Assembly: GCA_976226885.1 (NCBI GenBank) | Contig: OZ320313.1 | Coordinates: forward strand, 32,116,001-32,180,000 | Reading direction: 5' to 3' | DNA length: 64,000 nt | Origin: Iphione sp. A-MEVVRFRX5 | Lineage: Eukaryota | Part shown: positions 22,810 through 49,225 of the stretch, piece by piece | Numbering within the stretch: position 1 is the stretch's first letter | Layout of the letters: the number at the start of each line of letters is the position of its first letter | Position numbers and translations under genes: made by a program | The notes under the pieces: generated by a model | The model's input: only the letters and a program-made list of their open reading frames with translations | Told to the model about the DNA's origin: nothing | The model's database searches: none

Positions 22810-22944
22810 TTCTGAATACGGTCGCAAAGTAATTTAGGAGGAATCTGGGCTTGAAATCATATCCCTTTCTCTCTCTCTCTACAAATCAATAATAATAGGT
22901 AGGGATAGGTAATAGGTAGTAATTGCCATTTATTCAAGTAAATG

Positions 22945-23210: not shown

Positions 23211-23836
23211 CAACTAAGTTTTGTGTGAAAATCTAACGCTACGGCCTGCATGTTGAAAATTAAAAGTATAAACTCATAAAGTTTATGTATTTAACATTTC
23301 TCTATATATATGCACAAAAGCAGCAAACGTACATGCCCGCTGTCAAATGGAACAAATTTTTCCTTACCAAATTCCTCAATTGTTATTTCACCTTTTTCTT
23401 CAGAATAAGAATAAACTAATTTAACAAAACATGTATTTGTCTTTTGAATCCAATGTACAATATTTGAAATAAAGATTTTAAAGGAAACACGCATATAAAC
23501 ATTTTATATATAATGACAAATGTTCTCTTGCTAATGGTATGACGTCATAGGGCAAGTGTTTAGCACGTATCACCATGAATACTGTCCACACTACCGGCTT
23601 CGACACTACCTGTAAAACCGGCTTATGAGTGGTCCATCTTTATCCAATAGGATTCGAGGACTCTTCAGCTACCCTATGTGAAAGTTGGACTTCGAGTACC
23701 ACCTCAGTTGCGTAGCTAGTGTTTGACTCCACGCGTCAATTGACACATATTCTTAACTGTGATACGTTAGACAATTGTACATTAGCGGATTAATTAAATT
23801 CACTAATCGGTCTTCTTAAAAGAACACCTCAACGAC

Positions 23837-25262: not shown

Positions 25263-27189
25263 ACTGTATAAACCAGTTATGTGTCAAATGCTTGTACTAG
25301 TCATATAATTGACTCTATTACATTCATTTTGTCCGTTAAAATCAGTGTTATATTTGTGTGTTGTATTATTGTCTTTGTTCTTATACATATCCAAGTATAT
25401 GAATACAGGAAGACAATCGGCACAGTTAGAACCGTTTGATTATAGTAGAACAGTAGTTTATTTGTAGTCGTGTATACTTTATGTAGACATGATAGTACAA
25501 CTCACTTGTAATGGTACTGCGTTTATGTTTTATTAACTAAATCATCTTTAAACTTTTGAAGCTGTATTACATGACATGAGTTGCTCATGTATTTTTATAA
25601 GCACAAAAAGTGTGTAACACTAGGTTCAAATGAACAACTATTTACAATACAAAAAATATTAGTTTCTTACTGATATATTCTAGTCGAGCGATATTTTGCA
25701 AGAACTGAACTGTCCTTACATAGTATTTGACTGTCATTGACATAATCGGAAATAATATAAATGTACATGAACATACGATTTTGCATAAACATTAAATACT
25801 GAATATATATTCAGAGATCATCTAATTCCCAATCGGCTGTGTTGTGTTGGTAGGCACTGTTAATGTCGCAATTGACAATATCACTTGTTTGGCCTATAGC
25901 GATAGTGTCTTAAAAATGATACAACAAACTGATTTACTTGACTCATTATTTGAATAAAATTAGATTCCTCATAAGACCGTTATTATAGTTATTTTATTCT
26001 CTGAATGGTTTAGAGTAGACTAGCAGTCGTAATACAAAATCCAAACAACATATTAGATTAGTTTCTTTCAGTAGAAAATTGGTACGCTTCTCACAATAAG
26101 TTTGTATTTTAACACATGTTTTAAGATGTCTGATATAATCAGTTTATAAAATTGACGGATACATAACTATAGTATATAAAGTTTTTAGACATTCACTACA
26201 ACTTGCCTTTTAAAACATTAAGATAAATTCGATGGTCGTTAGGTTGTAACCATTTATAGATACGTACTAAATTATTTGAATTTGTACAACTACAACTTTC
26301 GAACAAAGTACAAACATTCACCCTACATATGTTGTATAAAACTGTCTGACTTGTACGGATGTAACTATTAAATAAAGAGAAAACTTCAACCTATTGTGTT
26401 CTGTCTACCTAAGTTGTATTTACTATAACAAAAATTAAAGCAATTCCTATGGATTAAATAATCTGAATTTAACTAACATATTTACTGTGTTTTGTAATCA
26501 ATAACACATTCGGATATTGAATTATCACAACTTATTTTTAATGATTGATTTTAATCAGTTTTTACTATTTCCTACACAATTCCAAAAGTTTTTCCAAGTT
26601 AAGTTATATGCCATTGTCTTGCCACATTTCAGAACAACTAGTACTACTGCCAGGTTCCATACTTATTGCTGATTAACCGTTATTCAATATAATTTCATGG
26701 GCACCAATTCATTAGACTTTTCTACAAATAAACCGTATCAAGCTAGTATTTCTGTTTGAAAAATACGTTGAAAACATACCAACTTATAAGAACTCAAAAT
26801 GTTTAGTATTTTCAACTTCACCGCCTAATACGTACTACTTTTATCCGTGTTCATTATTAGCTAAGCATGTAAAGCTATTTCACAAATTAGTGAAACACGT
26901 GGCCAACACAGTTCACTTGCAATCTTATCTCCTCACTTGTGCGCAACACATCCGTTTAAACTTAACGTAACTGCATACACCATCATACCATCGGTCTGTT
27001 CCGTATGGTCAGTCTGAAACTTCTTCTACAAACACATATTAACGCCTTCTGCACACAATAAAACCGAACACCATTCTCTGGTCACCCAACCTCCTGTTCT
27101 TATCAGTTCAGTTGTAAACTTAGCGTCTCAGTATACACCAGCGTAGGGATGTACCATTTCTTTGTTTCTTGTATGAATATTCTATAAAC

Positions 27190-27730
27190 ACAGCGACATC
27201 TCTTATCTTGTCAATGAACTACACTCGGCCGGTCAGTCACCACACCGCCTACGTCCCGGCAGGCACACCATGTCCTGTCACACTGTCGTTTGGGCGTATT
27301 CTGCAAACACGACGCGTCACTTATCTTCTGAGCGAACTACACTCGGTCAGCCAATCACAACTCCGTCTGCGTCCCAGCAGACGTGCCACGTTCTATCACA
27401 TTGCCACTTGTGCATATTTATTACACTACCCATAAAAAACGGTGGCCGAAAGTAGTCCGGTCATGGTGGCTGACATATGTGGCCCTGCGGTTTTACGAGA
27501 ATTAGTATCAATACGCCTGTGTCCACTCAGGCAGAACGGAAGGCTGTAAAATACTATCCCTCCGCCTGATAAGGCAGGCGCCGTAGGCGCTTGTCTACAA
27601 ACACAACGACATCACTTATCTTCTCGACGAACTACTCTCGGTCGGCCAATCACCACTGCGCTCGCATCCCGGCAGGCATACAACGTTCTGTCAGACTGTC
27701 GCTAGTGATGGCTCTACCTATATAAACTCT
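27190..27730 (+). promoter_or_regulatory. CpG-rich promoter island for gene C with a triplicated about 95-bp module
   Basis: Three degenerate copies of cttatctt...gaactac(a/t)ctcggtc(a/g)gccaatcac...cgtccc(g/a)gcag (about 27195, 27315, 27610). CCAAT at 27351 and 27646, TATATAAA at 27719, ATG at 27843. Confidence 0.55.
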
Positions 27731-27842
27731 TTCGGCTGGAAACACACTTCTTTCATCCACCGTTCGCCATCGCAGTTCACTTGAATTAACTGAAATATTG
27801 GACCCACAGTTTTTCACCGGAGGTTCCTCAAAAACTGGGAAA

Positions 27843-30080
27843 ATGAACCAACATTTCCTCAAACTAGAATCTCTACAAACTCACTCCAAAGGTAAGATTA
27901 TAAATGCTGAGGCAACAAGATTTTTATTAATTTAGCGTACTTAAATATTATAACAAATTGTACAGTGTACTTTTACGAAACCCCAGCTCATAACTGAACT
28001 AGCTACATATTTCACAATATTTAACGTGTACATCCACACAAATTGTACACTACTTCTCGTGAACAAACCTAATCAGCAAGCACCTAGGAACTGCTCCACC
28101 GACATTTACCTTTGATGTGAACCTTACATAACTAGACACTATTAATACATCAATTAGTGACAAATTCAGTTCATGACAATATGAAGTTAACCACACTTTC
28201 ACTCTCTACTATGACCGCGACATTCATTCACTTGTTCCTGGAAAAACATCAATTTTTCCTAAGAAGTTTACGTCGTTTTTCTCAACTAAAACGGAACCAT
28301 TACTTGAACATCGAATACGTATTAACGCATACTGATTACATCTACTATATAAAACTATAAACTTAAAATAATCCGGTAGTTAGCAAATCTCACCCAGATG
28401 TAAAAATTTACGAAATTTTCTATTACTATACTTTTGTATGTGCAGTCATTCATAACCGAGAGCGGGCGTTCTGTATTCGAGCTTAGAACCACCAGTCCCG
28501 GCCGTGCGACTTCTCACATGCCTACATATGTCTGTTCTTCACATTTACTGACGAAATCTTACAAACCTCGGTACCAAAGCCAAAAACCGAACGGTTTCTT
28601 GAAATGCAGGCAAATAAGTCTACGTTAATATGTACAGGAACAAACATTTGAACTTCTTTTTAACACCATTCTTCATTTTCCATTGTAGAACCAGATAGTT
28701 TCTCTGACACCGACCACGAAGCCACCGACCACGGTTTCTTGACGCACCAAACTTTCCAACACCAAAGCGACAGTCAGCGTATCTATCGCCAGAGCAACAA
28801 CAACGACAACGTCCGCAACCAAAGCATACACCCCAGTTCATCTGACATGGACAAGGACACCGACTACCGCGTTGTGAGACGCGAAACTTTCCGGCACCAA
28901 AACGACCGCGAACGCATTCATCGCCATAGCAACAACAACGACGAAATTCAACACCGAAACATCCGACATCAAAACCACCATAACAACAACAGTAAGTTTC
29001 AACAAACTAAGTAACAAAAGTTTCATTCAGAACCTATAGGCACACGTTGTTTTCGCGAAAAACCTATTACAAACATCAAAAAATGTTTCTTAATTCTACT
29101 GTTGTAAAAGTCTAACAACTTCTCAGAATACAAGTTATCTACTACAAAAACTAAATATTTTAAAGAATTTAATATGATTAGTTTGCCACAACTTTTAGAA
29201 CAAAAACGCCTATGGATATTGTTAATATGCAGTTCAAAATTCTACTTCTGTCAACCTTTACATTATCCACAGTACTTCATAATTTATAATACCTAATGTC
29301 TACTTGCTCTACTGCAGATGATTACGAGCTAGACGGAAACAACTCGCGTCAAAACCAACATGTTCATGCTGTCGACAACAACATACAGAACCAACCCAAA
29401 AACAAACATAGTAAGTATAAACAATCCTGCAACACAGTTCCAACACTTGCACAATGATATAGCTTCACTTTCGTTATACGTTGCTGAAACCTAATCTTGC
29501 TCTATTATTTTGTAACGTGGTTTTCTACATAAATGAAACCTCATGTATTTTTACACAACACATTTTTTTACAGAAACAAAGTGAACAAGAACTAGTTAGT
29601 ATAAACTCACAAAAGTTGTTATATTTTACAGATTGTTGCGGCCGACAAGACAACCAACTCTACAAGCACATTAGTGAACACATACATATGATGAACACGC
29701 GTGTCAATGAACAAGATAAAACTCTGGATAAAATACATCGCAAACTAGAACAGCAACAGGAACGAAACCGTGGCTTAGCCTTCAAACTACAAACAACGGA
29801 ACAATCTGCGCGCGTACTGGCACGAGAGAACAAGCGGCTTCAAGTACGACTCGACCTGTGGACTCGACACTTGCAGTCAGAACAACGGTTCAGACGGCAG
29901 TGGAGACAAAAAACGATAAGGACTGTGCAGAATGTTTTCGCAGAGAAAGAACAACATATTAACCATCTTCAACTCAAAACTGATGCGTTACGGCAGAGAG
30001 AACATGCTCGAAACAAACAGATTTTGCGTATGCAACTACAAATTATGGATCTTGTTCATCGTACAGAACAAAATGTTTAG
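27843..30080 (+). CDS. Spliced gene C, about 297 aa, His/Gln/Asn-rich N-half and long C-terminal coiled coil
   Basis: Exons 27843-27891 (GTAAG), 28689-28991 (303 nt, GTAAGT), 29318-29410 (93 nt, GTAAGT) and 29632-30080 (ttttacAG) join in frame with no stops, uniting ORFs 28739-29014 and 29481-30080. Confidence 0.8.
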
Positions 30081-33000
30081 ACCCAAAGAAATTTCGAGAC
30101 GGTAAGAACATCAAACATTCGACCTTTCCCTCAAGACTAATTACCTTTCATTGTATACATTATACATACAGTATCATATAACGTGAAGTAACCTATTACT
30201 TTTGTACACTTCCACCAGTAGTACAATTCCACCCAAAGTACCTTTTAGACGGCTATTGGAACATAATCCGTCAACAATATTGAAACGTTTGAGTTCATGT
30301 GCAATGAAGCTTTCGTGAAATATTCTGCCTACATTTCAGTCGGAATAAGTAAACAATGTTTCACTTTCACATATACTTAATTGATCAAACAAAATAATCA
30401 CATGTTACATCTTATTTTGGTAACACAGGTAATTGTTACAGCCTTATTTGACTGAACTGTGCTTGATTGTACAACAAGTAGTTCATGTGAAACAACTCAA
30501 TTAGTAACATATCACAACATTGTGACACTTTTTAAGATTAAATGCAACGATTTTTTTTTGTATTTCTTGAACCAATTTTTATAGTTGTAGCACAATTGGT
30601 TTTGTTTTAGCATCCACAACTTAAAATGTTACGTATCAACATTATACGGCTACGGCTATTAGTTTAATTACAACTCTTTGCGCACAAGTAGTAACTACGC
30701 AATATAGTTGCAGTTCATCTCGTTTATTAGTTTTACATTAACTACTTTTGCAATATACTCAACGAATTCATATGTAACTATAATACTACTTGGTAGATGG
30801 ATCCGAAAAAACCACGGAGTATGAAACTATCTGCTATGTAGTTAAACCTATTCACACAGTATCATCGAATGGTTTTATATATCTTTTGTATCAAAACACT
30901 AATTAGTAACTCATAATATAGTCATATGATATACCTTGTACGTTATCCATCGCTTAGTCTTTTAGTGATTGCTTTTCTTTTTTAGAACGTATAGACAACT
31001 TGAACTTGTCCTGTTGCACTTCATATTCTTTACATATAACGAGCGTTTACTAGTTTGAAGTAGAAAATAGTGCATATTAGAACACTTCCTTGTATTGCTG
31101 AAGTTGTTTTGTATCAATAAACAAATAAAAACAATTTGTAGTTGGACCTCTTGTATTTATTACCAAACAATTTGGTTGAAATGTCTTCAGACTACGATTT
31201 AGAAACTCCAAAACATTATCTCCTTTGTGAAATACAATAATATGTAATGAATACGGTTCAGACTTAACTACTACTTGATCCATTCTATATGTAATCTATT
31301 GTGCATTTAGAAATTTACAAATCTCATAATGCTAAACTCGACACTTTAATTCAGCAATGATTATGACATTCACCTTTTTGGTAAGACTGTACATGCTTCT
31401 ACACCGGTATGACTTGGGTAGCTAACTATTATTGAATGTAAGGATTTATTTTCCTAAAAAACTACATTTTCATATCTTTGGCAATTCTATCACCTACAAC
31501 GGCTTTCAGTATACTCTTTTTATCGAAATCGCTTACCATTTGCTATATTGCTGTATTTTTTAAAAAATTACTTTACTACTTTCATACTAAGATTTCTTGC
31601 ACTGAGTACCTATGTCCACAAACGACATACAATCTAAAACTGTCGAATATTTCTTTAATTCCGATTTAATCGAAAATGAAAGACTGTTGTATATATCAAA
31701 GTTCCCTATTACTCCCACTTTAACGCTGTCACTATGTCGCAAAAAACGTGTAACCGGGACACTAAAATATGCGAACACAGAATTTTGTGCTTGGAAATAA
31801 ATAATATGAATAGAATGTTGCCGAAGCAAGCATCATGAGCACGGGGTGTCACGAGGTCTTTACGCTCAATCACTGCATATGTGTGTATATGTAGACCGAC
31901 CGAACAGTAAATAGTAACTTCACCCAACTACTTGTTCGCCCGGCCCGACATACGCACGGTAGCAGCGGCAGCGCCACCGAAAAAAATGCAAAACTAGGTG
32001 AGTGTTAAAACGAAATATAAGAGAAGTAAGACAATGACAAATAACTATTATGCGGCAAAAGTAGTAAAGGGAGCAGCGGCAGTAACCTACTGGTAAACTA
32101 CATCGCTGCGACTTCTCAATGTCCCTGGAGAAAGACAACCCCTCCTCTTCAGCCAGTACTAGACCACATCACCGCTACGTGGATATCAACTAACACCTAG
32201 CCTGCACAACATAGAGTGCGTATGGCATAGCCATCCGCACAAAAGTATACGACTTGTGCCACTTAGAACCAAGCTTGTCAATTTTGACAGCTTACAAAAC
32301 ACCAGAGGAAGTTTACCAAACAAATACAGGTGAAATTATTCAAACTACGAGCACAATACGGCAGCAAAGAAATCACAACTGAACATCTCTTCTGAGCAAA
32401 CATTCGTTTGACAAAAACGGGACCGGCATTAGGTTTTTCTGTTGTTTCCAAATTTTCCTAATTAAATTACCTCTGCCACCGGATGCATAGACGGCCGGCG
32501 ACCAAGCCGCCGCCGCAGCTTACCCATACGCCTACTGCGAAAGCACCTGCCGCCGGCGCTGCCGGACAAACAGGCAACTCGGCTGCCCCGTATACCTACC
32601 GCGACAGCACCTTTCGCCGCCGCCGACATCGTCACCGTGCTAACAAGCGGCCAACGAATCCACCTATATTCACTAACACTCTTCGTCCGGCTCTTGCCAC
32701 CGTCAGCGGCTGTCAATCATACTACTACCAAAGAAGGAAGGTGAAGGGAAGAGACCAAGGTGCCTGAATACCGATTCACCCAAAATTAAAAATCACCCAT
32801 AACGCTTCACCCACATAGCTGTCAAGCTGTTGCTACTGTTGTGTATAATCACGGTTGTTGGGTCGCCTATTTTTACGCTAGTATCACTGATCTTTGCACC
32901 AACAATGCTTAAGTCAAGTTAACAGAAGACGACCGCTGGTAAAACAATATACTCTTTATAATACTTTTTCAAAGTCTTACAGTATATGTTCAAATGACAA

Positions 33001-34583
33001 AACCTTCTGAGAAGAGCACAGAGCACACATATCTTATTTTGTAAACCCAAGAAAACACTGCTTAATAGAACTACTTTCAGCCTACTTCCGGCAGCCGTTT
33101 TAAAAGAGATAGGGTAACTGAACTTTAGTTCTTGTAATTTATATTAAGGCTCTTTATTTGTAATAACACTACCTTATCACTCGGTTCACTCAAATCTCGT
33201 AAACAAAAGCATTAAGAACTACATGCTTGTTTTAAAACTCCTAATACAATACTTGTATAAGTATTTACTATTTTGTGCAATTACAGTAACATTAAGTTTC
33301 ATCTTTCGCTTAACTATTAAATCTGCGAAATATATACTTAATTTCGTACAACACTAAACTGCTAATTATTGACTGTTTACATTCATACTATCTATTAATA
33401 ATTCAGCACTTTAACAGTTGTCACTTAAACAGTAACAAATTCGCCAAAATGTATATCTTAAAATATTGTTTTCGCTTTTTTTGATATATATTTTTTACAT
33501 TATCCTTAACAAAAGTAAACTACTATATAGTAAACATCAATACTTCAAGTAACACAAAAGTTGATTGAAAACTTTTATTCATAAACTTTCAAAAGTAGTC
33601 TACTTGAACTTATAAACTAAAAACTTAAACACTAAACCATGATACAACCGGCGATACATACGTAATCGAATGTTAAACAGACTGATATACCAACTCAAAC
33701 ACCACTGATTGCTTTCATATCAAGTTTTACATAATTCTAAATGAAGTAAACTCCAGCTGAACACTTCATTATACTACACATCCTTTTCAGTACCACAATA
33801 TTTCCATTACCACTGTCCATATAACTAGTACATGTTCTTGCATAAACACTCGTACCAATTTTGTATCTATGTAATACAATGTATCACACACAGCCACACT
33901 TGTGCACAATCCTTGGTGGATATTAGTATGTTACTTAGATGCACACTTGTTTCAGCAGTTATACTACTGTTCGTTGAGCCTCTATGTTGTAAAACACCTT
34001 ACAACTCCTACTAAAATACACAACTCTAAACACTCACTACTAAACACTCACTCTAAATAACCATAATACAAAACTGTTACATAGTACATAACTTTACCTA
34101 AAACGCTATTATGTCAACAACATTATATATAGTTTCTTAACATATTACCACTTGTTCTCATTAATTTTTGTTTAATTGTGTTCTATTTATTTTCGACCTA
34201 CGCTACACACCCAAATTAGGTGGATGTTCTTTATTCTCCAAAAATTATACAAAGATAAACTTTAAAACAAATTGACTTATGCCACACTCATATCACTTGT
34301 CGCTAAAAAGTCTAATACACTTACAGGCTAAACATATGTAATCTAACTAAACTTTGTTACTTCTAATTGTAATCATAAACTCCCACCTTAAAGCTGCTAT
34401 AACCTTTTTGGTTAACTGTTCGTCTAAACCTTATACTTTCCACTAATACAAACACATTTTCATATGAACTGGTATACACAACAACCTGCTTTGCATCCCC
34501 ACTTCGACGTCCTGACATCGGTGTAAACTGCGTTACAAACAAATACAAACCAAACTGTATTATCAACACTTTACACAGTTATC

Positions 34584-36751
34584 TTACTTCTTTTTACTTT
34601 TCTTGCCTGGTGTCGCAATTTGTTGCTCTGAAGTTTTTTCACATGCCTGCCGTTTTGAAGTAGTTCCACGCACGTTGCTTTCCGAACAGCTACTACTTCC
34701 ATCAACTGAAGACAACATCTGTGAGCTATCACTCGCACCCGCAGTAACCACTTCGGCACTCTTTACATGAACATCACTAGGAACCTTAAGCGATATATTT
34801 CTAAGCTGTTCTCCCTCGATTTGCCCATCCAGATAGAACGGAAGATACGGAATAATGTCGTTGTCTGTTGTCAATGGCGCTTGAAGAGCATCCCGCAATT
34901 CGCTTTTCAACACCCATAAGTATTTGCGAATATTTACGACATCACACGACAACCTCCAACTGTCTTCTGTTTCTTTCCCAATTCCATCAATTTTAATCGC
35001 AGCCGATGCTCCACATTCTCCGCCTGTCATCAACTGTACAAATAAAGAAACACAATATGATTACACTACCTATATAAAATGTTCCCTAAAAGTAGTCCAG
35101 TCATGGAGGCTGACATATATGGCCCTACTTTCTACAATCATAGTCAATATTCCTACACCCCTCTGTTCAGTCAAGAAAAACCGAGGGTTGTAGACTTGCA
35201 TGAGGGGTCACAAAACAACGCACTATCTTACAATTCTCTCTCTCTCTCTTTCTCTTTCACTCCTCTCTATCTCTCTCTTGTTGTGTATAAAATACAATTC
35301 TCCATTTCTACGACTTCGCACAACCACTTAGTTAACTTTTATCACATCAAAACTAAAACAAAAACACAAATGCAACCAAATACATCTACTCACATATCTG
35401 AAACCTATGTATTTTGTAGATCTTGTCTAAACTATTTACCTTATATCTTTAAACTAACCAATTCAATACATTGTTTTTACTCGAACAACACCTCATCTGA
35501 ACACTAACAATGTGTTTCTAAAAAACCTTACCTGTATTTCATCTGGATGGTTCACTGTAGCTTCGAAACTTTCTGAGTAACTGTTGTACTTGTAGACAAC
35601 ATTCCGAAAACGGTACATCCTACCAACTTCAAACGTCATAGTCGCAGCTGCTCCCCACACACTGACACCAATGGTCTCTTTGCCATCAGTTATTGTCAAC
35701 TCCCGGATATATTTTTGGCCTCTTGTTGTTGAAACAGTCCTTAACTGCGCAACCTTTTGAATAAACAACAACAGAACATTAACATTGATATTACTAAGTT
35801 TTCTCTCACTTGTAGTTAAATCCACATATAATACAGCAACAGATCGCACAACTTATTTTGATACTAAAAAGTTCTTTACACATCGCTTAAACTGTCTTTA
35901 CGCTGATAGTAATTGAAACTTCTTCAACTAAAAAATAGTGCCAGCAGATTAATACAAAAAACATCTTCCATGTACAAACTTACATTCAATAAGTTTCCCG
36001 AAAAGGATACGGTTTCAGTATCCGATAACTTCATCACCTCCGATACAGTCTTCATAGGCACACCAGTAGTGTTGTCACTCTTGAACAAATCAATAGCATT
36101 GACTTCTTGTTCATTCGATATTTCCAATGGAGTAGCTCTGAAACATAATATCAACACCATGAAACTTATTACTTTTAACATAGCACTTTATACAATTCAG
36201 GAAGGAATTTGTAACCAATGCGACAATATCAAAACCCAACTACAAAACCACTGAAACTTTTACTATTCCGATTAATAAATGCGTCACTTCACAAACATGT
36301 CCACTAGTTTACAACCAAAACATTCCTATCAAATTACTATGAGTTATATTGCATCCACGTTATTCAATTAACGATACCAAAGTTTTCCGACAAAAACGAA
36401 ACAGACAAAACCTATTGCAACTTACTTTGAAATTGTAGTGCCTTTGAGGATTTTCACTTCACCACATTTTACGGCAAAGTCTTTCAGAATAACGGTTTGT
36501 CCTTCTTCGAAGTCCACCTTCACGTAGGCATGTCCGCACACGACACCGCTACCATCAGCCAAGACAAACTTTCGTCGAAGAATAGAAACCGAGTTCTTGT
36601 CTGGCCCAAAGGCCAGCTCGCCTCTGTCTTCTTCCAATTTCACAACAACGCACGTCAATTCTTGTGGAACGTTCCAAACATCGTTCAAATCCGCAATTGC
36701 AATTGTTCTTTGCATTGCTTTAACTGGTGAACGTGCAGCCGCAAAAGCCAT
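34584..36751 (-). CDS. 4-exon OB-fold ssDNA-binding protein (RPA70-like), about 383 aa
   Basis: Exons 36751-36426 (GTAAGT, phase 2), 36137-35984 (GTAAGT, phase 0), 35753-35532 (GTAAGG, phase 0) and 35033-34584 join in frame (1152 nt). OB signatures: RRKFVLADGSGVVCGHAY...FEEGQTVILKDFAVK and VSFSGNLLN|VAQLRTVSTTRGQKYIRELTITDGKETIGVSVWG...FEVGRMYRFRNVVYK. Basic C-terminal tail PGKKSKKK (NLS-like). Confidence 0.85.
35061..35126 (+). repeat. About 66-bp dispersed homolog of 27421-27486, inside intron 3 of the OB-fold gene
   Basis: ttacactacc...aaagtagtcc(a/g)gtcatgg(a/t)ggctgacatat(a/g)tggccct occurs at both sites. Confidence 0.8.
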
Positions 36752-36843
36752 CTTCCAAACTGTCAACGTACTGACTAGAATTACCCGCCAGTAGCAGATT
36801 TTGAGCACGTTAACACTGAACTAATCCATTCGGAAAGATCTAC

Positions 36844-37090
36844 TTATATAAGGCCACACTTGATAAGCTAATAGCAGCTTACTGACCAATAGAAGCACTC
36901 TGTTTTTCGAACATCTGCCTCGCTCGTGATTGGTTGACCTGGGAATGATGTCATTTACTTAATATATGCAAGCAACATTGCGACGGCACCAGGTTGTTCA
37001 ACTCGGTACTCCCCATTAGTATTCAAACCACACCTCCTAAACCAATAGCAGTACTGCCCAACTAACAGCTGATTCTGATTGGTTGATGTA
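36844..37090 (-). promoter_or_regulatory. Promoter of the OB-fold gene
   Basis: TTATATAA at 36844-36851, about 95 bp upstream of ATG 36751. CCAAT/ATTGG boxes at about 36886, 36929, 37042 and 37078. Confidence 0.55.
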
Positions 37091-37420
37091 CTAAATAACC
37101 TTATTCAATGAGGTAACTTCAATCCTACATTAACACATGCACTTGTATTTTATTCATGTATATACGTTTCTAACTGCTACTATTGAACCATTCTTCCGCC
37201 ATACAACTCATTGTTCATGATGACAACCAAACAACACACTGTATACAATATGGTTTTTACAAACGCACACTGTAGCGAACTCCTAATTTGATGTTGTTCA
37301 ACCAAATTCATTGAAAAACAGAATGTACCACAACTACATCAAACACAAATGCCATTTGTTTACTACGACCACTACAATGTTTCTCATCACATGAACACCA
37401 AAATATACTGTTTATGTTTA

Positions 37421-40400
37421 CTAACACAATTCTTGTAAAACTCCAGTAATTGCATTATGGTATGAAAAGGGACAATAACTAATGGACATTTGTACACTCA
37501 TTTGAGTTAAAAACCAGTCTAAACATGTGTTTCCATCCGTAGTAGCTTCTGTAACCTTTTGTTGAACTCCGTATGTCGTTTCCAACCAATTTAAAAAAAC
37601 TAAATTCCGTTCTTCAAACAAACACATATTTACGTCCCCTACTATAACTAACGAATTATTCTTTGGTAGATAAGGAACAGCTGTAAGAAGTAAAGTTTTG
37701 AATGACTCGATTGATGCACGTGGTGCCTTGTATACAATAAAGATTGTTAGCTCAAACTCACTACTACATCTTAAATCCACCAGCAAATATTCACAATTAT
37801 TATACCGGTAACCGTAAGTATTTACAATGGTCAAATCTGTTCTTACATATACAGCTAAACCATGAGACGGCCGAAAAGATGTATTGAACTGTGGTTCTGA
37901 TGCAAACACATTCTTAAAACCAATAATAGGAAACTTTGCAGGACTTTCATCCCTCTTAAAACGTGTTTCAGCGAAACATAACACAGTACTACTCAAAAGA
38001 TACTTATCACAACAAACGCTGCGAAAATGACCAAATAACGATTGAGCGTTTAAAAAAGTGACAGCAAAAGCATTTCGAATTATTGGGATATCTACAAAAT
38101 TCAACGCGACCTGACGGTCTTTTCTTAAACGTTCCATTTCTTTAACAACTCGATCATCCACTGTCACTTTAGTTCTATCAAATGATAGTAAATACAATCC
38201 ACTCAAACTGCGCAGTCTACTAAAACAAACATAATACGTATGAGCGTTAATTGGTCGCGACAACTGAACCGCAACTGAAGACATGGTAGTACCTTGCGCT
38301 CGGTGTACAGTACGTCCACTGCACTGACGCAGCGGAAACTGAGTGCGGTACACTTCCCCCTTCAGTACAAACTTTCTACTAACAACAAACAAAGGAGTCC
38401 AACTAGGGTCGTGGTTCACAGCAAACCTTTTGTGGTACTTCAACCTCTGATTCTTCCCAACATTGGGATCATCGAACTTCAACCACAGAATACTTGGTTG
38501 AGAAATTCCATCAAAATATTGAATTTTTGTCAAAGTACCAGTAGTTCCGTTTGTCAAACCATCCTCCGTATCCATATTATAAGTTATGTCGTACCGTAGA
38601 CCAACACCTACTTTTAAAACTTTCATTAGATCGCCAGTGTCTTTCAAACTTAAACTAGTCGAGGCGATACACTTTGCAATAGATTCTTTCAAGTTATGAT
38701 TCAAAATAACATCTTTTGCATAAATACAAGTTTTTTCAGAAATGCAATTTTCAAAAGCTAAATCATTATGTCTATTTACGCTTTCGTTTGTTGAAAATAA
38801 ATAGTCAGTACCACTTGGTATCTCTTGTACATTGCCAATGATTCTACTTTCAAGCATCTTGTAGTCTTGCTCCGTTTGCAAACCTTCTCTTAACCGATTC
38901 AAAAGCTGTGCAAAGTTTTTGTCGTTGGCTTGACGAACAATAGTCTGTAATTCAAATATTTGGAAATGTTCTCTCCATAAATTTGGAGCCAATCTTGATA
39001 AACCACTTGTATCTAAAAATATCCAACTATCTTTGACAGGCTGCAGTTGATACAAGTCACCAAAACAAATAATATGTATACCTCCAAACAATTGTTTATT
39101 GCCTTTGAGTCTTTGTAGTTGTATATGTATTCGTTCAAGCATGTTTGCTCCAACCATCGAAACTTCATCGACCAATAAGACTTTCAGATCGTTAAATTTC
39201 AACAACTGCGTATTAAGGGTACTGTCTGACATATCTACTATTTGCTTATAATTCCATACCTGCAAGGCACTGTGGATAGTTTTCCCACCTATCAAGAACG
39301 CAGCTTTAGCAGTTGGTGCTACACACAAAACTGAGAGAGCCGAAACTGACATATTACTCGCCAAGTTAAAATGACGTTGTAAGCTATGGTATATTGTTTT
39401 CAATAACAATGATTTCCCAACCCCAGCACCACCTGTTATGAACAAATGCAATTTATTCGCATCGTACAGCACCTCTTTCATGATGTGTTTATAAATTATT
39501 TGTTGCTCACAGGTGAGCAAAGCAACATTATCCAACATTTCACCACGGCTCCAAATGCTATCAATAACTGATGGACGCACACACACATGACCATCTTTTT
39601 CAAAATTTACATCAGTCTGCGGATCATCTCTTACCATGAAAAACAAACAATCATCTTGAATGTCCATTTCCTCTTTGTCACGACTATTTTCATAACCTGT
39701 ATTTGGTGCAACTGTACTTGTGTCAACATTTTTACTTTCTAAATCATTTATTTGTTTTAACAAATTATGAATTGGCTGTTGCACAAACACACAAAACTTT
39801 TCTACTATTTGTTGTTGAACAATACTTTCTAAGTTATGAAACAATTGCGTAAACTTGCTATCTGGTGGTAGTTCTGTCCTCCAAGGTAAACATAACAATA
39901 GCATAATACGAATATATTGTTCTTCGTTATTTTCAAGTGACGGACAATTGAATTTCAACACAGCCCGCTTTACACGTCGTTTATATACTTTAGAATTTGA
40001 ACGATAAAGAATAAAACTGCCTCCTTGCGCATCATCCAACCCAGAAACATTCTTACTTGTACTTTTACTTAAGGTAATGAGAGAACAATAGTCTCCTAAA
40101 CACCATGCTTCGAAAAATGCAGGTCGTGCTTGGTATAGTACCATTTTATCATCAACAAAAATATCTGTAGAATTATCTTCTAACTGTTCTAGTTGACTGT
40201 CGGTTTTCAAGATACGCTGTCTTTCGGAAGCAATTTTCGTATCTAAATATATCACACTAACACTTGTTTTGGTCATTGACATACCTAAAAGCATGTAAAT
40301 ACACTCCTGCGCACTTATTTCAGTACTATTCATAAAACACTTACCTACTTCTTTTAATTGTTCTTGCAAACTACACCGTTTGGATTTCGATTCTTTTAAT

Positions 40401-43400
40401 ATTTGCGACAGCAAAACACTTAAACCACGATGTTGTTTGTTTATATAACTTACAATATAAACTGCACAAGCATACGGATCAATAACATAAGATATATCAT
40501 GATTTGCTTTCCAAACCCCTAACAAATTTTTCATATAAGGATTTACGCGTATGTCTTTCGGTTCTCTTTTCAAAAACACTTTCCATGATGTTAATGAAGT
40601 CCGAACTGCACTAATATACCTCTCTTCGGTTAATTCCAAGTATTTTAAAAAATCGTCAAATGAAAAAGAACTTAATTTATCTTCATCATTCATAAGTTCA
40701 CAAACACGTCGAAAATCACGAATTGCTACCAAATCATCCTTCAAAGGCTCTAACACTTCAGTTTTTCGCATAGGAAAAACAGGAAAGTGAAACCGACAAA
40801 TAGCCTGGCCACGTTTTCTACATGTTCGAGAATGTTTATGCGTCTGTAGATCGATAAATTTCTTGTTGCTGTCCTCCACAGAACTTGAACAACTCACAAA
40901 CTTATCAATATATTCAGCAACTTCAACACTATTCTGCTTATCTGTGCTATACCGAGGATTATTCTTGCACCAAACTAACATGTGAACATGAGGACTTCCA
41001 CGATGTTGAAACTCCACTCGGTAGAAATAATCTTCCACTTCACCTATGGGATTTGCCTTACTCTCTAAAACTCCTCTCAAAAACTTATCAAAGCGAAAAT
41101 CAAAATATCTGGCACAAGTTACCGGATCACTACTAACTAACTGAGCCCTCTTAGTCCATGAAAATTCTTCTATTTCCTCATCTGTATACAAAACATTATC
41201 TATCAAAAGACCAAGTGTTCGCAGCAATGGTATCCAGTACAGATCAGCAGCAGACAAAGACATAAACCACGTAGGAAACCCAAGTTGTCTAATCATAGCC
41301 ATAACATTACTTTGTGCTCGCTCAAAATATTGTGGAGTATTCCTCAACCTATTATACATATAAAACCCTTCATCAGATGTTCGAAGCCTCTCTCTGCTTT
41401 CGCGTGTTGCCACGTCAATCTTGGAATAATGACCTACATTTCTACTACGACGAAGTGCAAAACGCGATACTGCCTTAATCAAAAGACTCTGATATTTTTT
41501 ATATTTGAAGAAAATATTTTCCAAATTTGTTGCGATACGTCTATCAACATTTCGCAATTCAAATTTACACACATCAGAATAACGCATCGAACAATTCACA
41601 TACGGATTAATTCCACCATACAAATGAGGATAAGCCATATACTCTCCATTTGCGTCATAAATTAAACTCAATGGCATATTGTATTCACCCGGAGCAATAT
41701 CGAAAAACAAATCCCCAGTATGAGCATCTAGAAGACTTTGCATTTGCAAATCCTTCTCAGTGACATCAACTTCAGAGAAGTTATCTTCATCACTATCGCT
41801 ATCATCATTGTCAAGTTCCTTAGTATTACAACTTTCGCTGTAACAACGCTCATTGGCTGCTTCATCTACAGATTCAGCTGTCAAACTTGGTCCATCGTTC
41901 ATCAATGCATTAACTGTTTGCGTTAACCAATCGTAATCAATGATAACATTATCTTCTTTATACAAAGGACTATTCTTCACTAACCACTCTAGAGCCTTCA
42001 ACACATTAACAGGGCGCACATTGAATTGCCTGTATGCATGCTTGTTTGAAAGTTTTCTCTTCAACCGAACACATGTAGTACCTGCCGTATTTATGTACCT
42101 CGGCAACTGAACAACAGTATCCTCTACACGTGCCAAAACATTTACAACAGGTCCCTTCAAACTGTATTGAAAACCACGGGGTAAATAACGTATTTGCATA
42201 AATGCGAGACGCCGAGCTACAAGACGTGCCTCATCGACAGTAATTTGTAACTCATGGGGAACAGTCGGCAATATAAATCCGTTCATGTAACAGATACGAG
42301 GTAAACGACGGTCACTAATCGCTTTGGAACATGTTTGACAAATATATTTGCATTCATTTTGAGACTTACCACCTACTACATGTTGAATATGATAGTAAAT
42401 TTCTGAAGTGACTTCCCGAACACTATGAATAAACCACACCTGGCTACACATGCAACAACAATAATGTGGCCCTTCTTCAATGTTAAGAAAAAAACTCTTG
42501 ATACACTTGTCTAACTCATTTGCGGTTGAATCTGTATCAGAAGAAACAACATTACCATTTGTTTTCTTGCGAACTTTTGCATTCTGTGAATTAACTACCC
42601 TGATAGACCGCTTCTGCTTCCTACTCTTTTCACTACTACAGTTTCCAATTATTTGATTTAAAATGTCGGCTTTATCATTGACCACTTTAGTTTTACCACA
42701 AACAGCCTTTTTTCTACCTTTGGTATGTTGTAACGCTACTAAGTTAGGTACAAGCATACCATCACTGTTTATCAACACACTTCTGCAGTTCGGTTCTTTC
42801 AGAGACTTACTTTTCTTGACACTTCTAGTTGTACTACACATGTTCTTCCTTTCAGATTGTAGCCCCGTTTTTTCTTGACTGTTACTACTCTTTTGGACAA
42901 ATTCTTTTACACGAGCACTTCCATTTCTGCTTTTCTTCTGATCGGATTTAGTCTTACTAAACGTCTGAGAAATGCCAGTTGTTTTGATAAAGCCAGAAAT
43001 ATTACCGTTCCGATCCGTTAACCTGTTTCCTTGTACCGATTCACTTACATTAGATCTACATGACTTTTCTGTTGTATGAAACATATCCTTACCTACCCAA
43101 CACCTCAAATTCTCTATCACTTCCATAGCAATGAACCGGTTGGGATAAATAGAATTTATATCTACAAATATTTCACAGAACGTATCAGACAATCCATTTT
43201 GGACCATATGCACCACAGAAATTTCATACTGGAATTGTTGTGAACTATAATATAACTTTTCTATATGACCAATAAGTTCATAAAAATCTTCAAAACATAT
43301 GTGAACAGCTGTACCTTCTGCCGACGGGAAACCTTTTTTAGAACGCGCATGAGAATCAAACATATAGTAAACACCAGTTCTGCAATATACTGCAATAGAC

Positions 43401-43780
43401 AAATGCTGTGCAACAAATATACAGAACGGACTAATCGAGAATGCTTTCACAAACGCAAAATATATGGAATCGCCTTTTGGTATGTGTACACCAACAAAAC
43501 ATTTCACCACATCAAAAAAAATCTTTCTACTATTTACAATCAATAATTGTGGCAACTCACAAGGAGTCAATTGCAAAGCAGTTACTCTCCGGCGAATTTG
43601 TGTATACAGAAAGTCGCCAAAGTCGAGGACATCATCTACATGTCTACTATTTACAATGCCATTACAAAAAACGAACACATACAACAAACAGCCGGCAGCA
43701 ATAGCGGTACATTGATTGCCACGACCACTGTGATTATATACACTACTATTTTGACTCCGAGAACCTTGTAAAACTTTCAT
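37421..43780 (-). CDS. Helentron (Helitron2/HLE2-type) Rep-helicase-endonuclease polyprotein with N-terminal herpes-tegument-type (peptidase C76-like) cysteine protease
   Basis: Uninterrupted 2,129-codon frame, first ATG at 43780. Protease: GSRSQ...GNQC and YYMFDSH. Cys-rich CCMC...CQTC. Rep: LGFPTWFMSLSAAD, YRVEFQHRGSPHVHMLVW (HUH at about 40982), YACAVYIVSYINK. PIF1: ITGGAGVGKS, APTAKAA, DEVSMV, FGDLYQLQPV, QFPLR...TVHRAQG, YVCFSR. APE: FLNAQSL, FAETRF, VYKAP, GDVN, LDWF, SYH. Confidence 0.96.
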   Translation of the reverse strand: MKVLQGSRSQNSSVYNHSGRGNQCTAIAAGCLLYVFVFCNGIVNSRHVDDVLDFGDFLYTQIRRRVTALQLTPCELPQLLIVNSRKIFFDVVKCFVGVHIPKGDSIYFAFVKAFSISPFCIFVAQHLSIAVYCRTGVYYMFDSHARSKKGFPSAEGTAVHICFEDFYELIGHIEKLYYSSQQFQYEISVVHMVQNGLSDTFCEIFVDINSIYPNRFIAMEVIENLRCWVGKDMFHTTEKSCRSNVSESVQGNRLTDRNGNISGFIKTTGISQTFSKTKSDQKKSRNGSARVKEFVQKSSNSQEKTGLQSERKNMCSTTRSVKKSKSLKEPNCRSVLINSDGMLVPNLVALQHTKGRKKAVCGKTKVVNDKADILNQIIGNCSSEKSRKQKRSIRVVNSQNAKVRKKTNGNVVSSDTDSTANELDKCIKSFFLNIEEGPHYCCCMCSQVWFIHSVREVTSEIYYHIQHVVGGKSQNECKYICQTCSKAISDRRLPRICYMNGFILPTVPHELQITVDEARLVARRLAFMQIRYLPRGFQYSLKGPVVNVLARVEDTVVQLPRYINTAGTTCVRLKRKLSNKHAYRQFNVRPVNVLKALEWLVKNSPLYKEDNVIIDYDWLTQTVNALMNDGPSLTAESVDEAANERCYSESCNTKELDNDDSDSDEDNFSEVDVTEKDLQMQSLLDAHTGDLFFDIAPGEYNMPLSLIYDANGEYMAYPHLYGGINPYVNCSMRYSDVCKFELRNVDRRIATNLENIFFKYKKYQSLLIKAVSRFALRRSRNVGHYSKIDVATRESRERLRTSDEGFYMYNRLRNTPQYFERAQSNVMAMIRQLGFPTWFMSLSAADLYWIPLLRTLGLLIDNVLYTDEEIEEFSWTKRAQLVSSDPVTCARYFDFRFDKFLRGVLESKANPIGEVEDYFYRVEFQHRGSPHVHMLVWCKNNPRYSTDKQNSVEVAEYIDKFVSCSSSVEDSNKKFIDLQTHKHSRTCRKRGQAICRFHFPVFPMRKTEVLEPLKDDLVAIRDFRRVCELMNDEDKLSSFSFDDFLKYLELTEERYISAVRTSLTSWKVFLKREPKDIRVNPYMKNLLGVWKANHDISYVIDPYACAVYIVSYINKQHRGLSVLLSQILKESKSKRCSLQEQLKEVGKCFMNSTEISAQECIYMLLGMSMTKTSVSVIYLDTKIASERQRILKTDSQLEQLEDNSTDIFVDDKMVLYQARPAFFEAWCLGDYCSLITLSKSTSKNVSGLDDAQGGSFILYRSNSKVYKRRVKRAVLKFNCPSLENNEEQYIRIMLLLCLPWRTELPPDSKFTQLFHNLESIVQQQIVEKFCVFVQQPIHNLLKQINDLESKNVDTSTVAPNTGYENSRDKEEMDIQDDCLFFMVRDDPQTDVNFEKDGHVCVRPSVIDSIWSRGEMLDNVALLTCEQQIIYKHIMKEVLYDANKLHLFITGGAGVGKSLLLKTIYHSLQRHFNLASNMSVSALSVLCVAPTAKAAFLIGGKTIHSALQVWNYKQIVDMSDSTLNTQLLKFNDLKVLLVDEVSMVGANMLERIHIQLQRLKGNKQLFGGIHIICFGDLYQLQPVKDSWIFLDTSGLSRLAPNLWREHFQIFELQTIVRQANDKNFAQLLNRLREGLQTEQDYKMLESRIIGNVQEIPSGTDYLFSTNESVNRHNDLAFENCISEKTCIYAKDVILNHNLKESIAKCIASTSLSLKDTGDLMKVLKVGVGLRYDITYNMDTEDGLTNGTTGTLTKIQYFDGISQPSILWLKFDDPNVGKNQRLKYHKRFAVNHDPSWTPLFVVSRKFVLKGEVYRTQFPLRQCSGRTVHRAQGTTMSSVAVQLSRPINAHTYYVCFSRLRSLSGLYLLSFDRTKVTVDDRVVKEMERLRKDRQVALNFVDIPIIRNAFAVTFLNAQSLFGHFRSVCCDKYLLSSTVLCFAETRFKRDESPAKFPIIGFKNVFASEPQFNTSFRPSHGLAVYVRTDLTIVNTYGYRYNNCEYLLVDLRCSSEFELTIFIVYKAPRASIESFKTLLLTAVPYLPKNNSLVIVGDVNMCLFEERNLVFLNWLETTYGVQQKVTEATTDGNTCLDWFLTQMSVQMSISYCPFSYHNAITGVLQELC

Positions 43781-45062
43781 TGTAAAGTACAGCTGTTCTT
43801 TTTTCAACACTTTATATTCAATGTCAAAAACTTAATACTTTCCCATTATACCACATAAAAGAACAATAACTTTTCTCTATATTTTTATCCGTCCTATTAT
43901 TTGGTTATCGTCTCACTGATAGCACACCAACACAGTCTTTGATTGAAAAAAGCCTACATTTACAAATCAACAATAAACTAATAAACTTGCGAACAACCAA
44001 CCTTTTCACATAAAATTGTTTCACAACATGTGGTTTTACTCTGTCATAACCCCAAACTATACTTATTTAAATACAACGCGTACACAACAACATCAACTTT
44101 TGACGTCGCAGTAATATTAACCTCCTTCACATTACACACCTATCCTCTTCTTTCTGAATTGCTCTCCACAAACCCAACCAACTATAACACGAACACTACC
44201 GACCTCGGCTGCCACCATGAACAATGCGGACTCTGTGCTAACACCCACCCTTTTTATATAAAACCTACTTGTCTAATCTTCAGTTGCCGACACAAAAAAT
44301 GTTCATCAATACAAACTCTCTTGTTGTTGTAGAAACATCCCCCTATGTGTCATACCGACCACAACGCCATAAAGTAAAAAGACCAGAACATCAAAGTACT
44401 CTACTATCTGTCACGGAAATCTTACACTATAAAAACCGACACAGCGTACAACGCACAAATAAACACATAAACTTAAAAGCGGCTAAGAATCCACAAACCC
44501 AAACCGACCGGAACCAATCCCTACCATCTTTTGAAAAACATTTAAAAACTATTTTTCTTATTCCAATACCCACATACTTCGTTAAAAATGATACAAACTA
44601 ATACCATATTAACAAACAAGTCTACAAAATCTTCTATAACAGTTTATTGACTAAATTCGTATACGCTTCCACCAATGCTTAATTTGCTTTTTACTTCTTC
44701 TAATTGCTTTATTAGCGTTCAGGTTTTCCTCATTCAAACTATTAGCATTCCTTTTAAGAATAGTGCACAGTAACACTAAACATTAAACACGAAAATAATA
44801 AACTATTTCTATTAAAACAGTTACGTTTGACAGCGAAACCCTAAAATTTTGCAATTAAACTTATACTTTAACCATACTTATAAATAGTTGATAAATTCAC
44901 ACCGATTCACTCTAAAAAATATTCAACTACACACACACTCTTTCCATTCTTATACATAATGTTTGAATTATTAAAACACAAAACTTATATAGTTAAAAAC
45001 AGATATATTCCCACCCTCTTTCAAGTTTTCAGTCATCACACTACGCTCTTACATATCGTTTA

Positions 45063-45090
45063 TGTGATTGGTCAGTTTTGAACCAATCAC
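45063..45090. promoter_or_regulatory. Inverted CCAAT pair in the divergent interval between the transposase and gene D
   Basis: gTGATTGGtcagttttgaaCCAATCAc lies 200 bp upstream of ATG 45290 and about 1.3 kb upstream of the transposase ATG on the other strand. Confidence 0.45.
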
Positions 45091-45289
45091 AGTTCACGAA
45101 CATCTTTGCACACGGTACTGTTCCGCTCTGGTCGTTTGGACCACGCCTACCACTCTCTACTTACTTGTTCGCAGCATTTCTCGCCGAGTACCGCTACCAC
45201 ATACTAATTGTACTATTTACTACCACAGTCGTATACAAGAATCTTACAATAAGCCATTAACGGTTTATCACCTTGGCTTCTATACTAAT

Positions 45290-49100: not shown

Positions 49101-49225
49101 ATTCGTGTACGTACAACAACTCGACACACTATACGACCACCATCATAAGATTGACGGAAACTTCATTTTAATACACCAACTTGAATACTAGTCAGTTACG
49201 CTCACATTATACAATAAGAACACAC

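What the first reader, a model, noticed from the sequence alone, without database searches (positions are those of the whole stretch)
34584..36751. Hidden 4-exon RPA70-like ssDNA-binding gene directly downstream of the transposase
Seen: four ORF-track fragments splice at canonical GTAAG/AG sites into one 383-aa frame with two clear OB folds, a probable third and a KKSKKK tail. It has its own TATA/CCAAT promoter about 670 bp from the transposase stop. It is too divergent and compact to look like host RPA1. Inferred: a dedicated SSB protecting the displaced strand in rolling-circle transposition, analogous to RPA cargo of plant Helitrons.
Basis: partly seen in the sequence, partly recalled or inferred. 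Interest (0 to 1): 0.75.

Follow-up and report, generated by a model that had tools for sequence, protein, structure and literature searches.

The report
RPA-like three-OB gene carried by Helentron
A real four-exon gene just downstream of a rolling-circle transposase encodes a compact protein of three OB folds of the kind that bind single-stranded DNA. It travels and evolves with that transposon, which is a known kind of cargo in an unusually diverged form.

Summary
The four minus-strand exons (36751-36426, 36137-35984, 35753-35532, 35033-34584) join in frame through GTAAG donors and AG acceptors to give 383 codons.

All four exons, their splice sites, their phases and a Lys codon split across intron 1 recur in five to six diverged paralog families of this genome. 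dN/dS is 0.14-0.22.

Every copy lies 0.3-1.4 kb downstream of a Helentron Rep/helicase/endonuclease ORF, on the same strand. The same arrangement occurs in a second organism.

- **Exon 1:** folds as an OB barrel whose best matches are archaeal RPA and RPA70 DBD-A (Z 11-12).
- **Exon 3:** looks like RPA70 DBD-B by language-model features. It has the 'WG' strand motif of SSB/RPA folds.
- **Exon 4:** folds as a small third OB with no zinc ribbon.

No Pfam RPA model reaches significance, so this is RPA-like in fold and context but not a sequence-level RPA70 member.

Helentrons are already known to carry RPA-like genes, so this is a diverged member of a known kind. ssDNA binding and splicing remain untested; no RNA run was listed.

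The whole window lies inside an 80.5-kb Helentron with canonical ends. The scan had noted this element before, on other DNA of this genome, with a smaller size estimate.

The parts
36843..36850 (-). TATA box (TATATAAG), 92-99 nt upstream of the ATG
   Evidence: Sequence. A TATA motif lies at -54 to -99 in all five families checked. This is motif-level evidence only.
36426..36751 (-). Exon 1: ATG with A at -3, a short basic N-terminus, and OB fold 1 (aa ~16-108). It ends in phase 2 before GTAAG.
   Evidence: AF2 pLDDT 74, all-beta barrel. Foldseek and VIA best matches are archaeal RPA OB, RPA70 DBD-A, Teb1-A, SsoSSB and HIN.
35984..36137 (-). Exon 2: linker plus the first strand of OB fold 2. 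Its first base completes a Lys codon split by intron 1.
   Evidence: The split codon is AAA or AAG (Lys) in 6 of 6 families.
35532..35753 (-). Exon 3: the bulk of OB fold 2 (RPA70 DBD-B-like), with an invariant Trp in a 'VWG' strand
   Evidence: Alignment A2. Atlas features give 0.96 with 194 shared features to a REPA_OB_2 cluster. The profile aligns weakly to 2kbn (E 0.021) and to SsoSSB, with Trp on Trp56. tRNA_anti-codon is sub-threshold.
34782..35006 (-). OB fold 3 (first ~85 aa of exon 4), a minimal barrel without a zinc ribbon
   Evidence: AF2 pLDDT 80, topology b1-b2-b3-helix-b4-b5. All structural matches are OB folds, among them RPA70 DBD-C, Teb1-C, TPP1 and Stn1, but only at Z 6-6.8.
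34584..35033 (-). Exon 4: OB3, a Ser-rich low-complexity stretch, the KKSKKK tail (34587-34604) and the TAA stop
   Evidence: The KK[SNG]KKK tail is conserved in four families. It is a putative nuclear localisation signal (inference).
37421..43810 (-). Helentron transposase ORF (2129 aa): OTU/Herpes_teg_N-like protease, DUF6570, Rep, PIF1 helicase and AP endonuclease
   Evidence: Pfam. Four copies at 99-100% identity plus diverged families at 49-65%.
1..64000 (-). The whole window is interior to an ~80.5-kb Helentron (window -15626 to 64892). The OB gene lies 28.1-30.3 kb from its 5' end.
   Evidence: Three copies on C1, C13 and C15 are 99.4-99.8% identical, with sharp ends and unrelated flanks. 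The 13-nt subterminal repeats occur only at the ends, and there is a 3' stem-loop.

Best explanation
This is an accessory gene of a Helentron (an endonuclease-bearing rolling-circle transposon). It is transcribed from its own promoter just downstream of the Rep/helicase/endonuclease ORF and spliced from four exons into a 383-aa nuclear protein. That protein has three tandem OB folds in an order like RPA70 DBD-A, DBD-B and a stripped-down DBD-C, followed by a basic tail. It most likely coats the single-stranded DNA made when the Rep/helicase peels off the transposing strand, protecting it and keeping it unfolded until it is copied or integrated. Shown here: the gene structure, its conservation, its linkage to the transposase, and the OB folds. 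Inferred: ssDNA binding, nuclear import, and a role in transposition.
For: The exon model is conserved, with splice sites, phases and a split Lys codon, in 5-6 families. dN/dS is 0.14-0.22. All 17 genomic exon-1 matches lie 0.3-1.4 kb downstream of a RepHel C-terminus on the same strand, and identity to the window falls in step for both genes: RepHel 65/58/49% against exon 1 58/51/43%. The same order, RepHel then OB1 then OB2 then OB3 exon, is found on two 1.8-Mb contigs of another assembly at about 30-35% identity. The gene lies inside an element with Helentron termini. OB1 matches archaeal RPA OB at Z 12.3, U. maydis RPA70 DBD-A at Z 11.3 and human RPA70 residues 181-287 at Z 10.9. Exon 3 resembles a REPA_OB_2 cluster at 0.96. 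OB3 has the OB topology. Aromatic residues are invariant in each OB. Helentron RPA genes have been proposed to bind ssDNA during transposition (PMC4067079).
Against: No DNA-binding or expression data exist, and no RNA run was listed. No Pfam RPA or SSB model reaches significance on any exon of any family. OB1 matches dsDNA-binding HIN domains about as well (Z 11.1) as it matches RPA70. OB3 matches are only Z 6-6.8. The middle OB could not be folded, because it spans an exon junction and the joined protein was not built. Profiles of the four exons found nothing within 10 kb of RepHel in an oyster, a hemichordate, a sea cucumber and a coral, so the gene is not universal among related Helentrons.
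Confidence: 0.7

Rival explanations
1. It is a tandem-OB protein that binds double-stranded or hairpin DNA, like HIN-200 domains. For example, it could recognise the subterminal repeats or stem-loops of the element rather than coat ssDNA.
For: HIN-200 domains (tandem OB folds that bind dsDNA) are among the best structural matches of OB1. HELIANO reports HIN and Ssb-like_OB Pfam hits almost only in Helentron-type elements. The element ends carry hairpins.
Against: No exon hit the Pfam HIN model in the scans run at E up to 1-10. Exon 3 features point to REPA_OB_2, and its Trp aligns with a strand motif of an ssDNA-binding SSB. The top OB1 matches are RPA/SSB domains.
Confidence: 0.12
2. It is an OB-fold adaptor that works through protein contacts rather than by binding DNA itself. 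For example, it could recruit or sequester host RPA32/14 or other replication and repair factors, or tether RepHel.
For: OB3 resembles DBD-C/Stn1/TPP1-type OBs, which are protein-interaction modules. The gene is strictly linked to RepHel.
Against: No C-terminal trimerisation helix follows OB3 in the model: a low-complexity tail follows instead. OB1 and OB2 look like DNA-binding OBs.
Confidence: 0.08
3. It is a passenger: a captured host gene that rides in the element and does nothing for transposition.
For: Helitron-like elements often capture host genes. The gene was not detected next to related RepHel genes in four other invertebrates. A solo relative without a neighbouring RepHel exists on C17.
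Against: It keeps its position, intron structure and low dN/dS through element lineages that have diverged to ~45-50% aa identity, and in a second organism. A passenger would decay at that depth.
Confidence: 0.06
4. It is not a gene: the open frames and splice-like motifs are chance.
For: There is no transcript evidence, no Pfam hit, and almost no database relatives (3 hits in 1.84 billion).
Against: Four exons are conserved with splice sites in many families under purifying selection. Two exons give confident OB-fold models.
Confidence: 0.02

Closest known systems
RPA-like genes of Helentrons (for example the 358-aa RPA ORF of mite Helentron-Mo with DBD-A and DBD-B; Thomas et al. 2014, PMC4067079)
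   Same: It is a separate small gene beside a Rep/helicase/endonuclease ORF inside a Helentron. It is of similar size (383 against 358 aa), has tandem RPA-type OB folds, and has the same proposed role of ssDNA binding during rolling-circle transposition.
   Different: The mite protein is recognised by CDD RPA1_DBD_A/B at E 1e-12 to 1e-15 and has no introns. This one matches no Pfam RPA model, has three conserved introns and carries a third minimal OB. HELIANO (PMC11417382) finds Pfam-detectable RPA in Helentron-type elements only in its subgroup a and mostly upstream of RepHel. This element has the subgroup-b marks (Exo_endo_phos, Herpes_teg_N), and its gene is downstream.
RPA70-like genes of plant Helitrons
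   Same: An OB-fold ssDNA-binding-type cargo gene lies downstream of RepHel in a rolling-circle transposon, and it has introns.
   Different: The element group is different (Helitron/HLE1 rather than Helentron/HLE2). The plant proteins are clear RPA70 homologues by sequence. The literature considers these independent captures.
Cellular RPA70 (RPA1)
   Same: OB1 superposes on DBD-A (Z about 11), exon 3 resembles DBD-B, and OB3 gives weak matches to DBD-C. The domain order is the same.
   Different: It is less than two thirds the length. It has no N-terminal DBD-F, no zinc ribbon in the third OB and no trimerisation helix. It is multi-copy and transposon-linked. The host locus that matches the DBD-B model lies elsewhere (C13:83.5 Mb).
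Archaeal single-OB RPA/SSB proteins (MM0293 OB domain 2ken/2kbn; Sulfolobus SSB 1o7i)
   Same: These are the best structural match of OB1 (Z 12.3) and the best sequence-profile matches of exon 3. They share the 'D-x-(T/S)-G ... W-G' strand pattern.
   Different: They come from another domain of life and have one OB per chain. Identity is only 16-20%, so this is a fold-level likeness only.

Membership tests
RPA70 / Replication factor A large subunit | Significant sequence match to the RPA70 OB models (REPA_OB_2, tRNA_anti-codon, Rep_fac-A_C, Rep-A_N) | tested here: not met
   No family reaches its cut-off on any exon of any paralog. The best are tRNA_anti-codon at E about 0.1 and OB_MEIOB_N at E 0.04 on exon 3. 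A genome-wide REPA_OB_2 search hits only C13:83.5 Mb and C88.
RPA70 / Replication factor A large subunit | DBD-A-type OB fold | tested here: met
   The exon 1 model (pLDDT 74) matches U. maydis RPA70 residues 182-285 at Z 11.3, human RPA70 residues 181-287 at Z 10.9, and yeast DBD-A at Z 9.5.
RPA70 / Replication factor A large subunit | DBD-B-type OB fold | tested here: inconclusive
   Atlas features give 0.96 with 194 shared features to a REPA_OB_2 cluster, and there are weak profile hits to SSB/RPA OBs. It was not folded, because the domain spans the exon 2/3 junction and the joined protein was not built.
RPA70 / Replication factor A large subunit | DBD-C with a four-Cys zinc ribbon and a C-terminal trimerisation helix | tested here: not met
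   Alignments A3 and A6 show no conserved Cys quartet. The model is a bare five-strand barrel followed by low complexity. DBD-C matches are only Z 6-6.6.
RPA70 / Replication factor A large subunit | N-terminal protein-interaction OB (DBD-F) | tested here: not met
   Only about 15 residues precede OB1.
RPA70 / Replication factor A large subunit | Binds single-stranded DNA | not testable with these tools
   Needs an EMSA or similar assay with the expressed protein.
Helentron accessory (cargo) gene | Lies inside an element bounded by Helentron termini | tested here: met
   The 80.5-kb unit has sharp ends in three copies. The 13-nt subterminal inverted repeats occur only at the ends, a 3' stem-loop is present, and the ends are T-rich. 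These match the hallmarks in PMC4067079.
Helentron accessory (cargo) gene | Constant linkage to, and co-divergence with, the RepHel-endonuclease gene across families | tested here: met
   All 17 exon-1 matches lie 0.3-1.4 kb downstream on the same strand, and identities fall in step. The arrangement also occurs in a second organism. A formal co-phylogeny was not possible.
Helentron accessory (cargo) gene | Kept by selection rather than decaying | tested here: met
   dN/dS is 0.14-0.22 over 237-324 codons in five pairs.
Helentron (HLE2) element | Rep + PIF1 helicase with a C-terminal AP endonuclease | tested here: met
   Helitron_like_N at 1e-28, PIF1 at 5e-23, DUF6570 at 3e-18. Exo_endo_phos is sub-threshold at residues 1942-2077 (18.6 bits against a 24.5-bit cut-off, E 0.0016).
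HIN-200 (PYHIN) DNA-binding domain | Sequence match to the HIN model; tandem OB pair that binds dsDNA | tested here: not met
   No HIN hit appeared in any Pfam scan. There is only fold-level likeness of OB1 (Z 11.1).

The most novel reading that the evidence does not exclude
This is a separate, so far unrecognised family of three-OB ssDNA-binding proteins specific to a lineage of endonuclease/OTU-type Helentrons that domain-based surveys miss. A self-encoded SSB of this kind may be what lets these elements move very long cargo (here 80.5 kb) as single-stranded DNA.
Probability: 0.15. Interest if true: 0.65.

Novelty: new member of a known kind. Interest (0 to 1): 0.38.

Why it matters
RPA-like cargo is a recurring but functionally untested feature of rolling-circle transposons. 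This case shows that such genes can be too diverged for Pfam or CDD to see. Surveys that report RPA as confined to some Helentron subgroups may therefore undercount it. It also supplies a clean set of intact, recently active copies (four at over 99% identity) with conserved introns, which could be used to test whether a transposon-encoded SSB is needed for transposition. The more unusual object is its carrier. That is an 80.5-kb Helentron with canonical ends and four copies, about twice the largest Helitron size (39 kb) quoted in the review read here (PMC6431247).

Tried and rejected
- **RNA evidence:** no RNA run was listed, so read laying was not used and the junctions remain untested by reads.
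- **Pfam:** scans of every exon and paralog found nothing significant.
- **Exon 1 relatives:** an exhaustive HMMER search with the exon-1 profile found only 3 hits in 1.84 billion proteins. Two are real, and one is a repetitive 7135-aa protein that I set aside.
- **Exon 4 relatives:** word-based searches for relatives of exon 4 and of the C17 paralog found none.
- **Internal duplication:** profile-profile comparison of the three OB regions with each other showed no detectable similarity, so there is no sign of recent internal duplication.
- **DNA self-search:** searches of the genome with 19-kb pieces were swamped by high-copy repeats and did not give element boundaries. The boundaries came from fetching and aligning the copies instead.
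- **Fetch allowance:** A RepHel against OB co-phylogeny was therefore not done, and the host RPA1 locus, the C4 copy and more of the C17 locus were not fetched.
- **Other invertebrates:** the exon profiles found nothing within 10 kb of related RepHel genes in Crassostrea virginica, Ptychodera flava, Apostichopus japonicus and Oculina patagonica.
- **Other ORFs:** Pfam on six other long ORFs of the window gave nothing.
- **Joined protein:** the joined (spliced) protein was never assembled or sent to any tool. All searches and folds were exon by exon, so the middle OB, which spans a junction, was not folded.

Full report
**1. The observation**

On the minus strand an ATG at 36751 opens exon 1 (36751-36426), which ends before GTAAG. 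Exon 2 is 36137-35984 (CAG before it, GTAAG after). Exon 3 is 35753-35532 (AAG before it, GTAAG after). Exon 4 is 35033-34584 (CAG before it, ending KKSKKK then TAA). The lengths are 326+154, 222 and 450 nt, which keep one frame of 383 codons. [quoted passage not shown] It also has a C-terminal Exo_endo_phos match that is sub-threshold (18.6 bits against a 24.5-bit cut-off, E 0.0016). Together these make a Helentron-type transposase.

**2. Is it a real gene?**

Searching the window's own genome exon by exon gave 16-18 matches for each of exons 1, 3 and 4. Four copies are near-identical, and several families are at about 43-66% aa identity.

In representatives of five further families, all four exons recur in the same order. 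AG and GT sit at the homologous edges, exons 2 and 3 have the same lengths (51 and 74 codons), and the phases are the same. The codon split by intron 1 is AA|A or AA|G, which is Lys, in all six families. The residue at -3 of the ATG is A in all five families that keep exon 1, and in one of them a stop sits two codons upstream of that ATG. Nei-Gojobori dN/dS, counted exon by exon and summed, is 0.14-0.22. A TATA motif lies 54-99 nt upstream of the ATG in all five families.

The gene is therefore real and under selection. Splicing itself could not be checked, because no RNA run was listed.

**3. Linkage to the transposon**

Every exon-1 match lies 0.3-1.4 kb downstream of the C-terminus of a RepHel-endonuclease ORF on the same strand. 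Identity to the window falls in step for both genes: RepHel C-terminus 65, 58 and 49% against exon 1 at 58, 51 and 43%.

An exhaustive profile search with exon 1 over 1.84 billion proteins found only three hits. The two real ones sit on two 1.8-Mb contigs of one ENA assembly. Each is directly downstream of a Herpes_teg_N-DUF6570-Rep-PIF1-endonuclease gene, and each is followed by exon-3-like and exon-4-like ORFs.

The gene is not universal, however. The exon profiles find nothing within 10 kb of RepHel genes of about 38-40% identity in an oyster, a hemichordate, a sea cucumber and a coral.

**4. What the protein is**

No Pfam family is significant on any exon of any family.

- **Exon 1**, folded with a 7-row alignment, gives an all-beta barrel (pLDDT 74). 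Foldseek's best matches are the OB domain of MM0293 (E 1.4e-4), Sulfolobus SSB, HIN-200 domains, human SSB1, POT1 and Teb1. The exhaustive aligner gives Z 12.3 to MM0293, 11.5 to Pyrococcus Rpa1, 11.3 to Ustilago RPA70 residues 182-285, 11.2 to Teb1 OB-A, 11.1 to a HIN domain and 10.9 to human RPA70 residues 181-287.
- **Exon 3** has language-model features nearest a eukaryotic REPA_OB_2 cluster (0.96, 194 shared features). Its profile aligns weakly to the same MM0293 domain (E 0.021) and to Sulfolobus SSB. The invariant Trp of 'VWG' falls on the Trp at residue 56 of that SSB's 'LWG'. That this Trp stacks on ssDNA is my recollection, not something tested here.
- **The first 90 residues of exon 4** fold (pLDDT 80) as b1-b2-b3-helix-b4-b5. 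All structural matches are OB folds, including RPA70 DBD-C, Teb1-C, TPP1, CTC1 and Stn1, but only at Z 6-6.8. There is no conserved Cys quartet for a zinc ribbon.
- **The tail** is Ser-rich and ends in KK[SNG]KKK in four families.

The three OB regions show no detectable similarity to one another. The host's own REPA_OB_2 locus is elsewhere.

The middle OB spans the exon 2/3 junction.

**5. Mechanism**

The best reading is a transposon-encoded, nuclear, RPA-like ssDNA-binding protein that serves rolling-circle transposition. This role has been proposed for Helentron and Helitron RPA genes (PMC4067079, PMC11417382). The rivals are a HIN-like dsDNA or hairpin binder, a protein adaptor, and a mere passenger. 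None of these is excluded by direct evidence, but conservation through deep element lineages argues against a passenger.

**6. Comparison and novelty**

Helentrons are already described as carrying RPA and OTU genes. One example is a 358-aa, intron-less RPA with DBD-A and DBD-B in a mite. HELIANO reports Pfam-detectable RPA in Helentron-type elements only in one subgroup and mostly upstream of RepHel. It also reports Ssb-like_OB and HIN hits almost only in that group.

The present gene lies downstream of RepHel in an element with the endonuclease and Herpes_teg_N marks, and it is invisible to Pfam. It is a diverged member of a known kind, not a new kind.

**7. Surroundings**

The whole window is interior to a repeat unit of 80,5xx bp (window -15626 to 64892; C1:32100374-32180892). 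The copies on C13 and C15 are 99.4-99.8% identical, with sharp ends and unrelated flanks. A fourth copy on C4 is inferred from protein matches.

Read in RepHel orientation, the unit starts with T-rich bases followed by a 13-nt subterminal repeat, whose inverted partner lies 30 nt further in. It ends with the inverted 13-mer, a 6-bp stem-loop and ...CTTGTT. The 13-mer occurs nowhere else in the window. These are the published Helentron hallmarks.

RepHel lies 21.1-27.5 kb from the 5' end, and the OB gene lies at 28.1-30.3 kb. Strong strand skew (C-poor on the RepHel-sense strand) covers the 5' 43 kb and stops at the 5' boundary. The last 10 kb at the 3' end are skewed the other way.

Earlier notes of this scan on other DNA of this genome had estimated 32-39 kb and had not found the right end.

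Noticed in passing
window 1-64000 (element = window -15626 to 64892; C1:32100374-32180892): The window is interior to an ~80.5-kb Helentron. It has canonical ends: 13-nt subterminal inverted repeats found only at the ends, a 5' hairpin, a 3' stem-loop and T-rich termini. Copies on C1, C13 and C15 are 99.4-99.8% identical, with unrelated flanks. That is about twice the 39 kb quoted as the largest Helitron in PMC6431247.
   Followed up: partly
window 21900-64000 and L026-L027 (window -15600 to -5600): A strong GC skew (C-poor on the RepHel-sense strand, -0.2 to -0.45 on the + strand) covers the 5' 43 kb of the element and stops sharply at its 5' boundary. The middle ~27 kb is unskewed. The 3'-terminal 10 kb is skewed the opposite way (+0.15 to +0.29). 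The cause is unknown. It could be deamination of the transposed single strand, or a composite origin.
   Followed up: partly
L006:6560-8441 (G000:C17:5539559-5541440, + strand): This is a solo relative of the gene. Exon 2-, 3- and 4-like pieces (43% and 26-35% identity) have canonical splice sites and an AAKRIRP tail. No OB1 exon was detected, and there is no RepHel within 7 kb upstream. It could be a relic of an old family or a domesticated copy. No database relatives were found.
   Followed up: partly
G000:C4:48819864-48851152 (not fetched): In the fourth near-identical copy, exon 4 lies 29.6 kb from exon 3 instead of 0.5 kb. This suggests a large insertion or rearrangement in intron 3 of that copy.
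   Followed up: no
window 16151-17926 (ORF 16981-17913, + strand): This stretch, antisense to RepHel and 16.7 kb downstream of the OB gene, matches at 70-83% nt a stretch only ~3 kb downstream of the OB gene in a diverged Helentron family (C10:78338162-78340317). It is therefore another module shared between families. It has no Pfam hit.
   Followed up: partly
window 267-1184, 2511-3094, 6000-6829, 6989-7855, 56726-58685: Several tandem arrays lie inside the element, with periods of 29/57, 33, 203, 252-255 and 313 bp. This fits the 'central repeats' described for Helentrons and their non-autonomous derivatives.
   Followed up: no
L033:8632-11450 and L034:9155-12199 (ENA ERZ25767047 contigs): In a second organism the homologous gene sits downstream of RepHel in the same way. 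There, however, exon 1 carries a long Pro/Ser/Thr-rich N-terminal extension (up to ~280 aa) before OB1.
   Followed up: partly
window 43330-43760 (RepHel residues 17-159): The N-terminus of the transposase matches Herpes_teg_N (E 4.8e-6), the herpesvirus tegument cysteine-protease/deubiquitinase domain. HELIANO lists this domain as typical of endonuclease-bearing Helentrons.
   Followed up: partly
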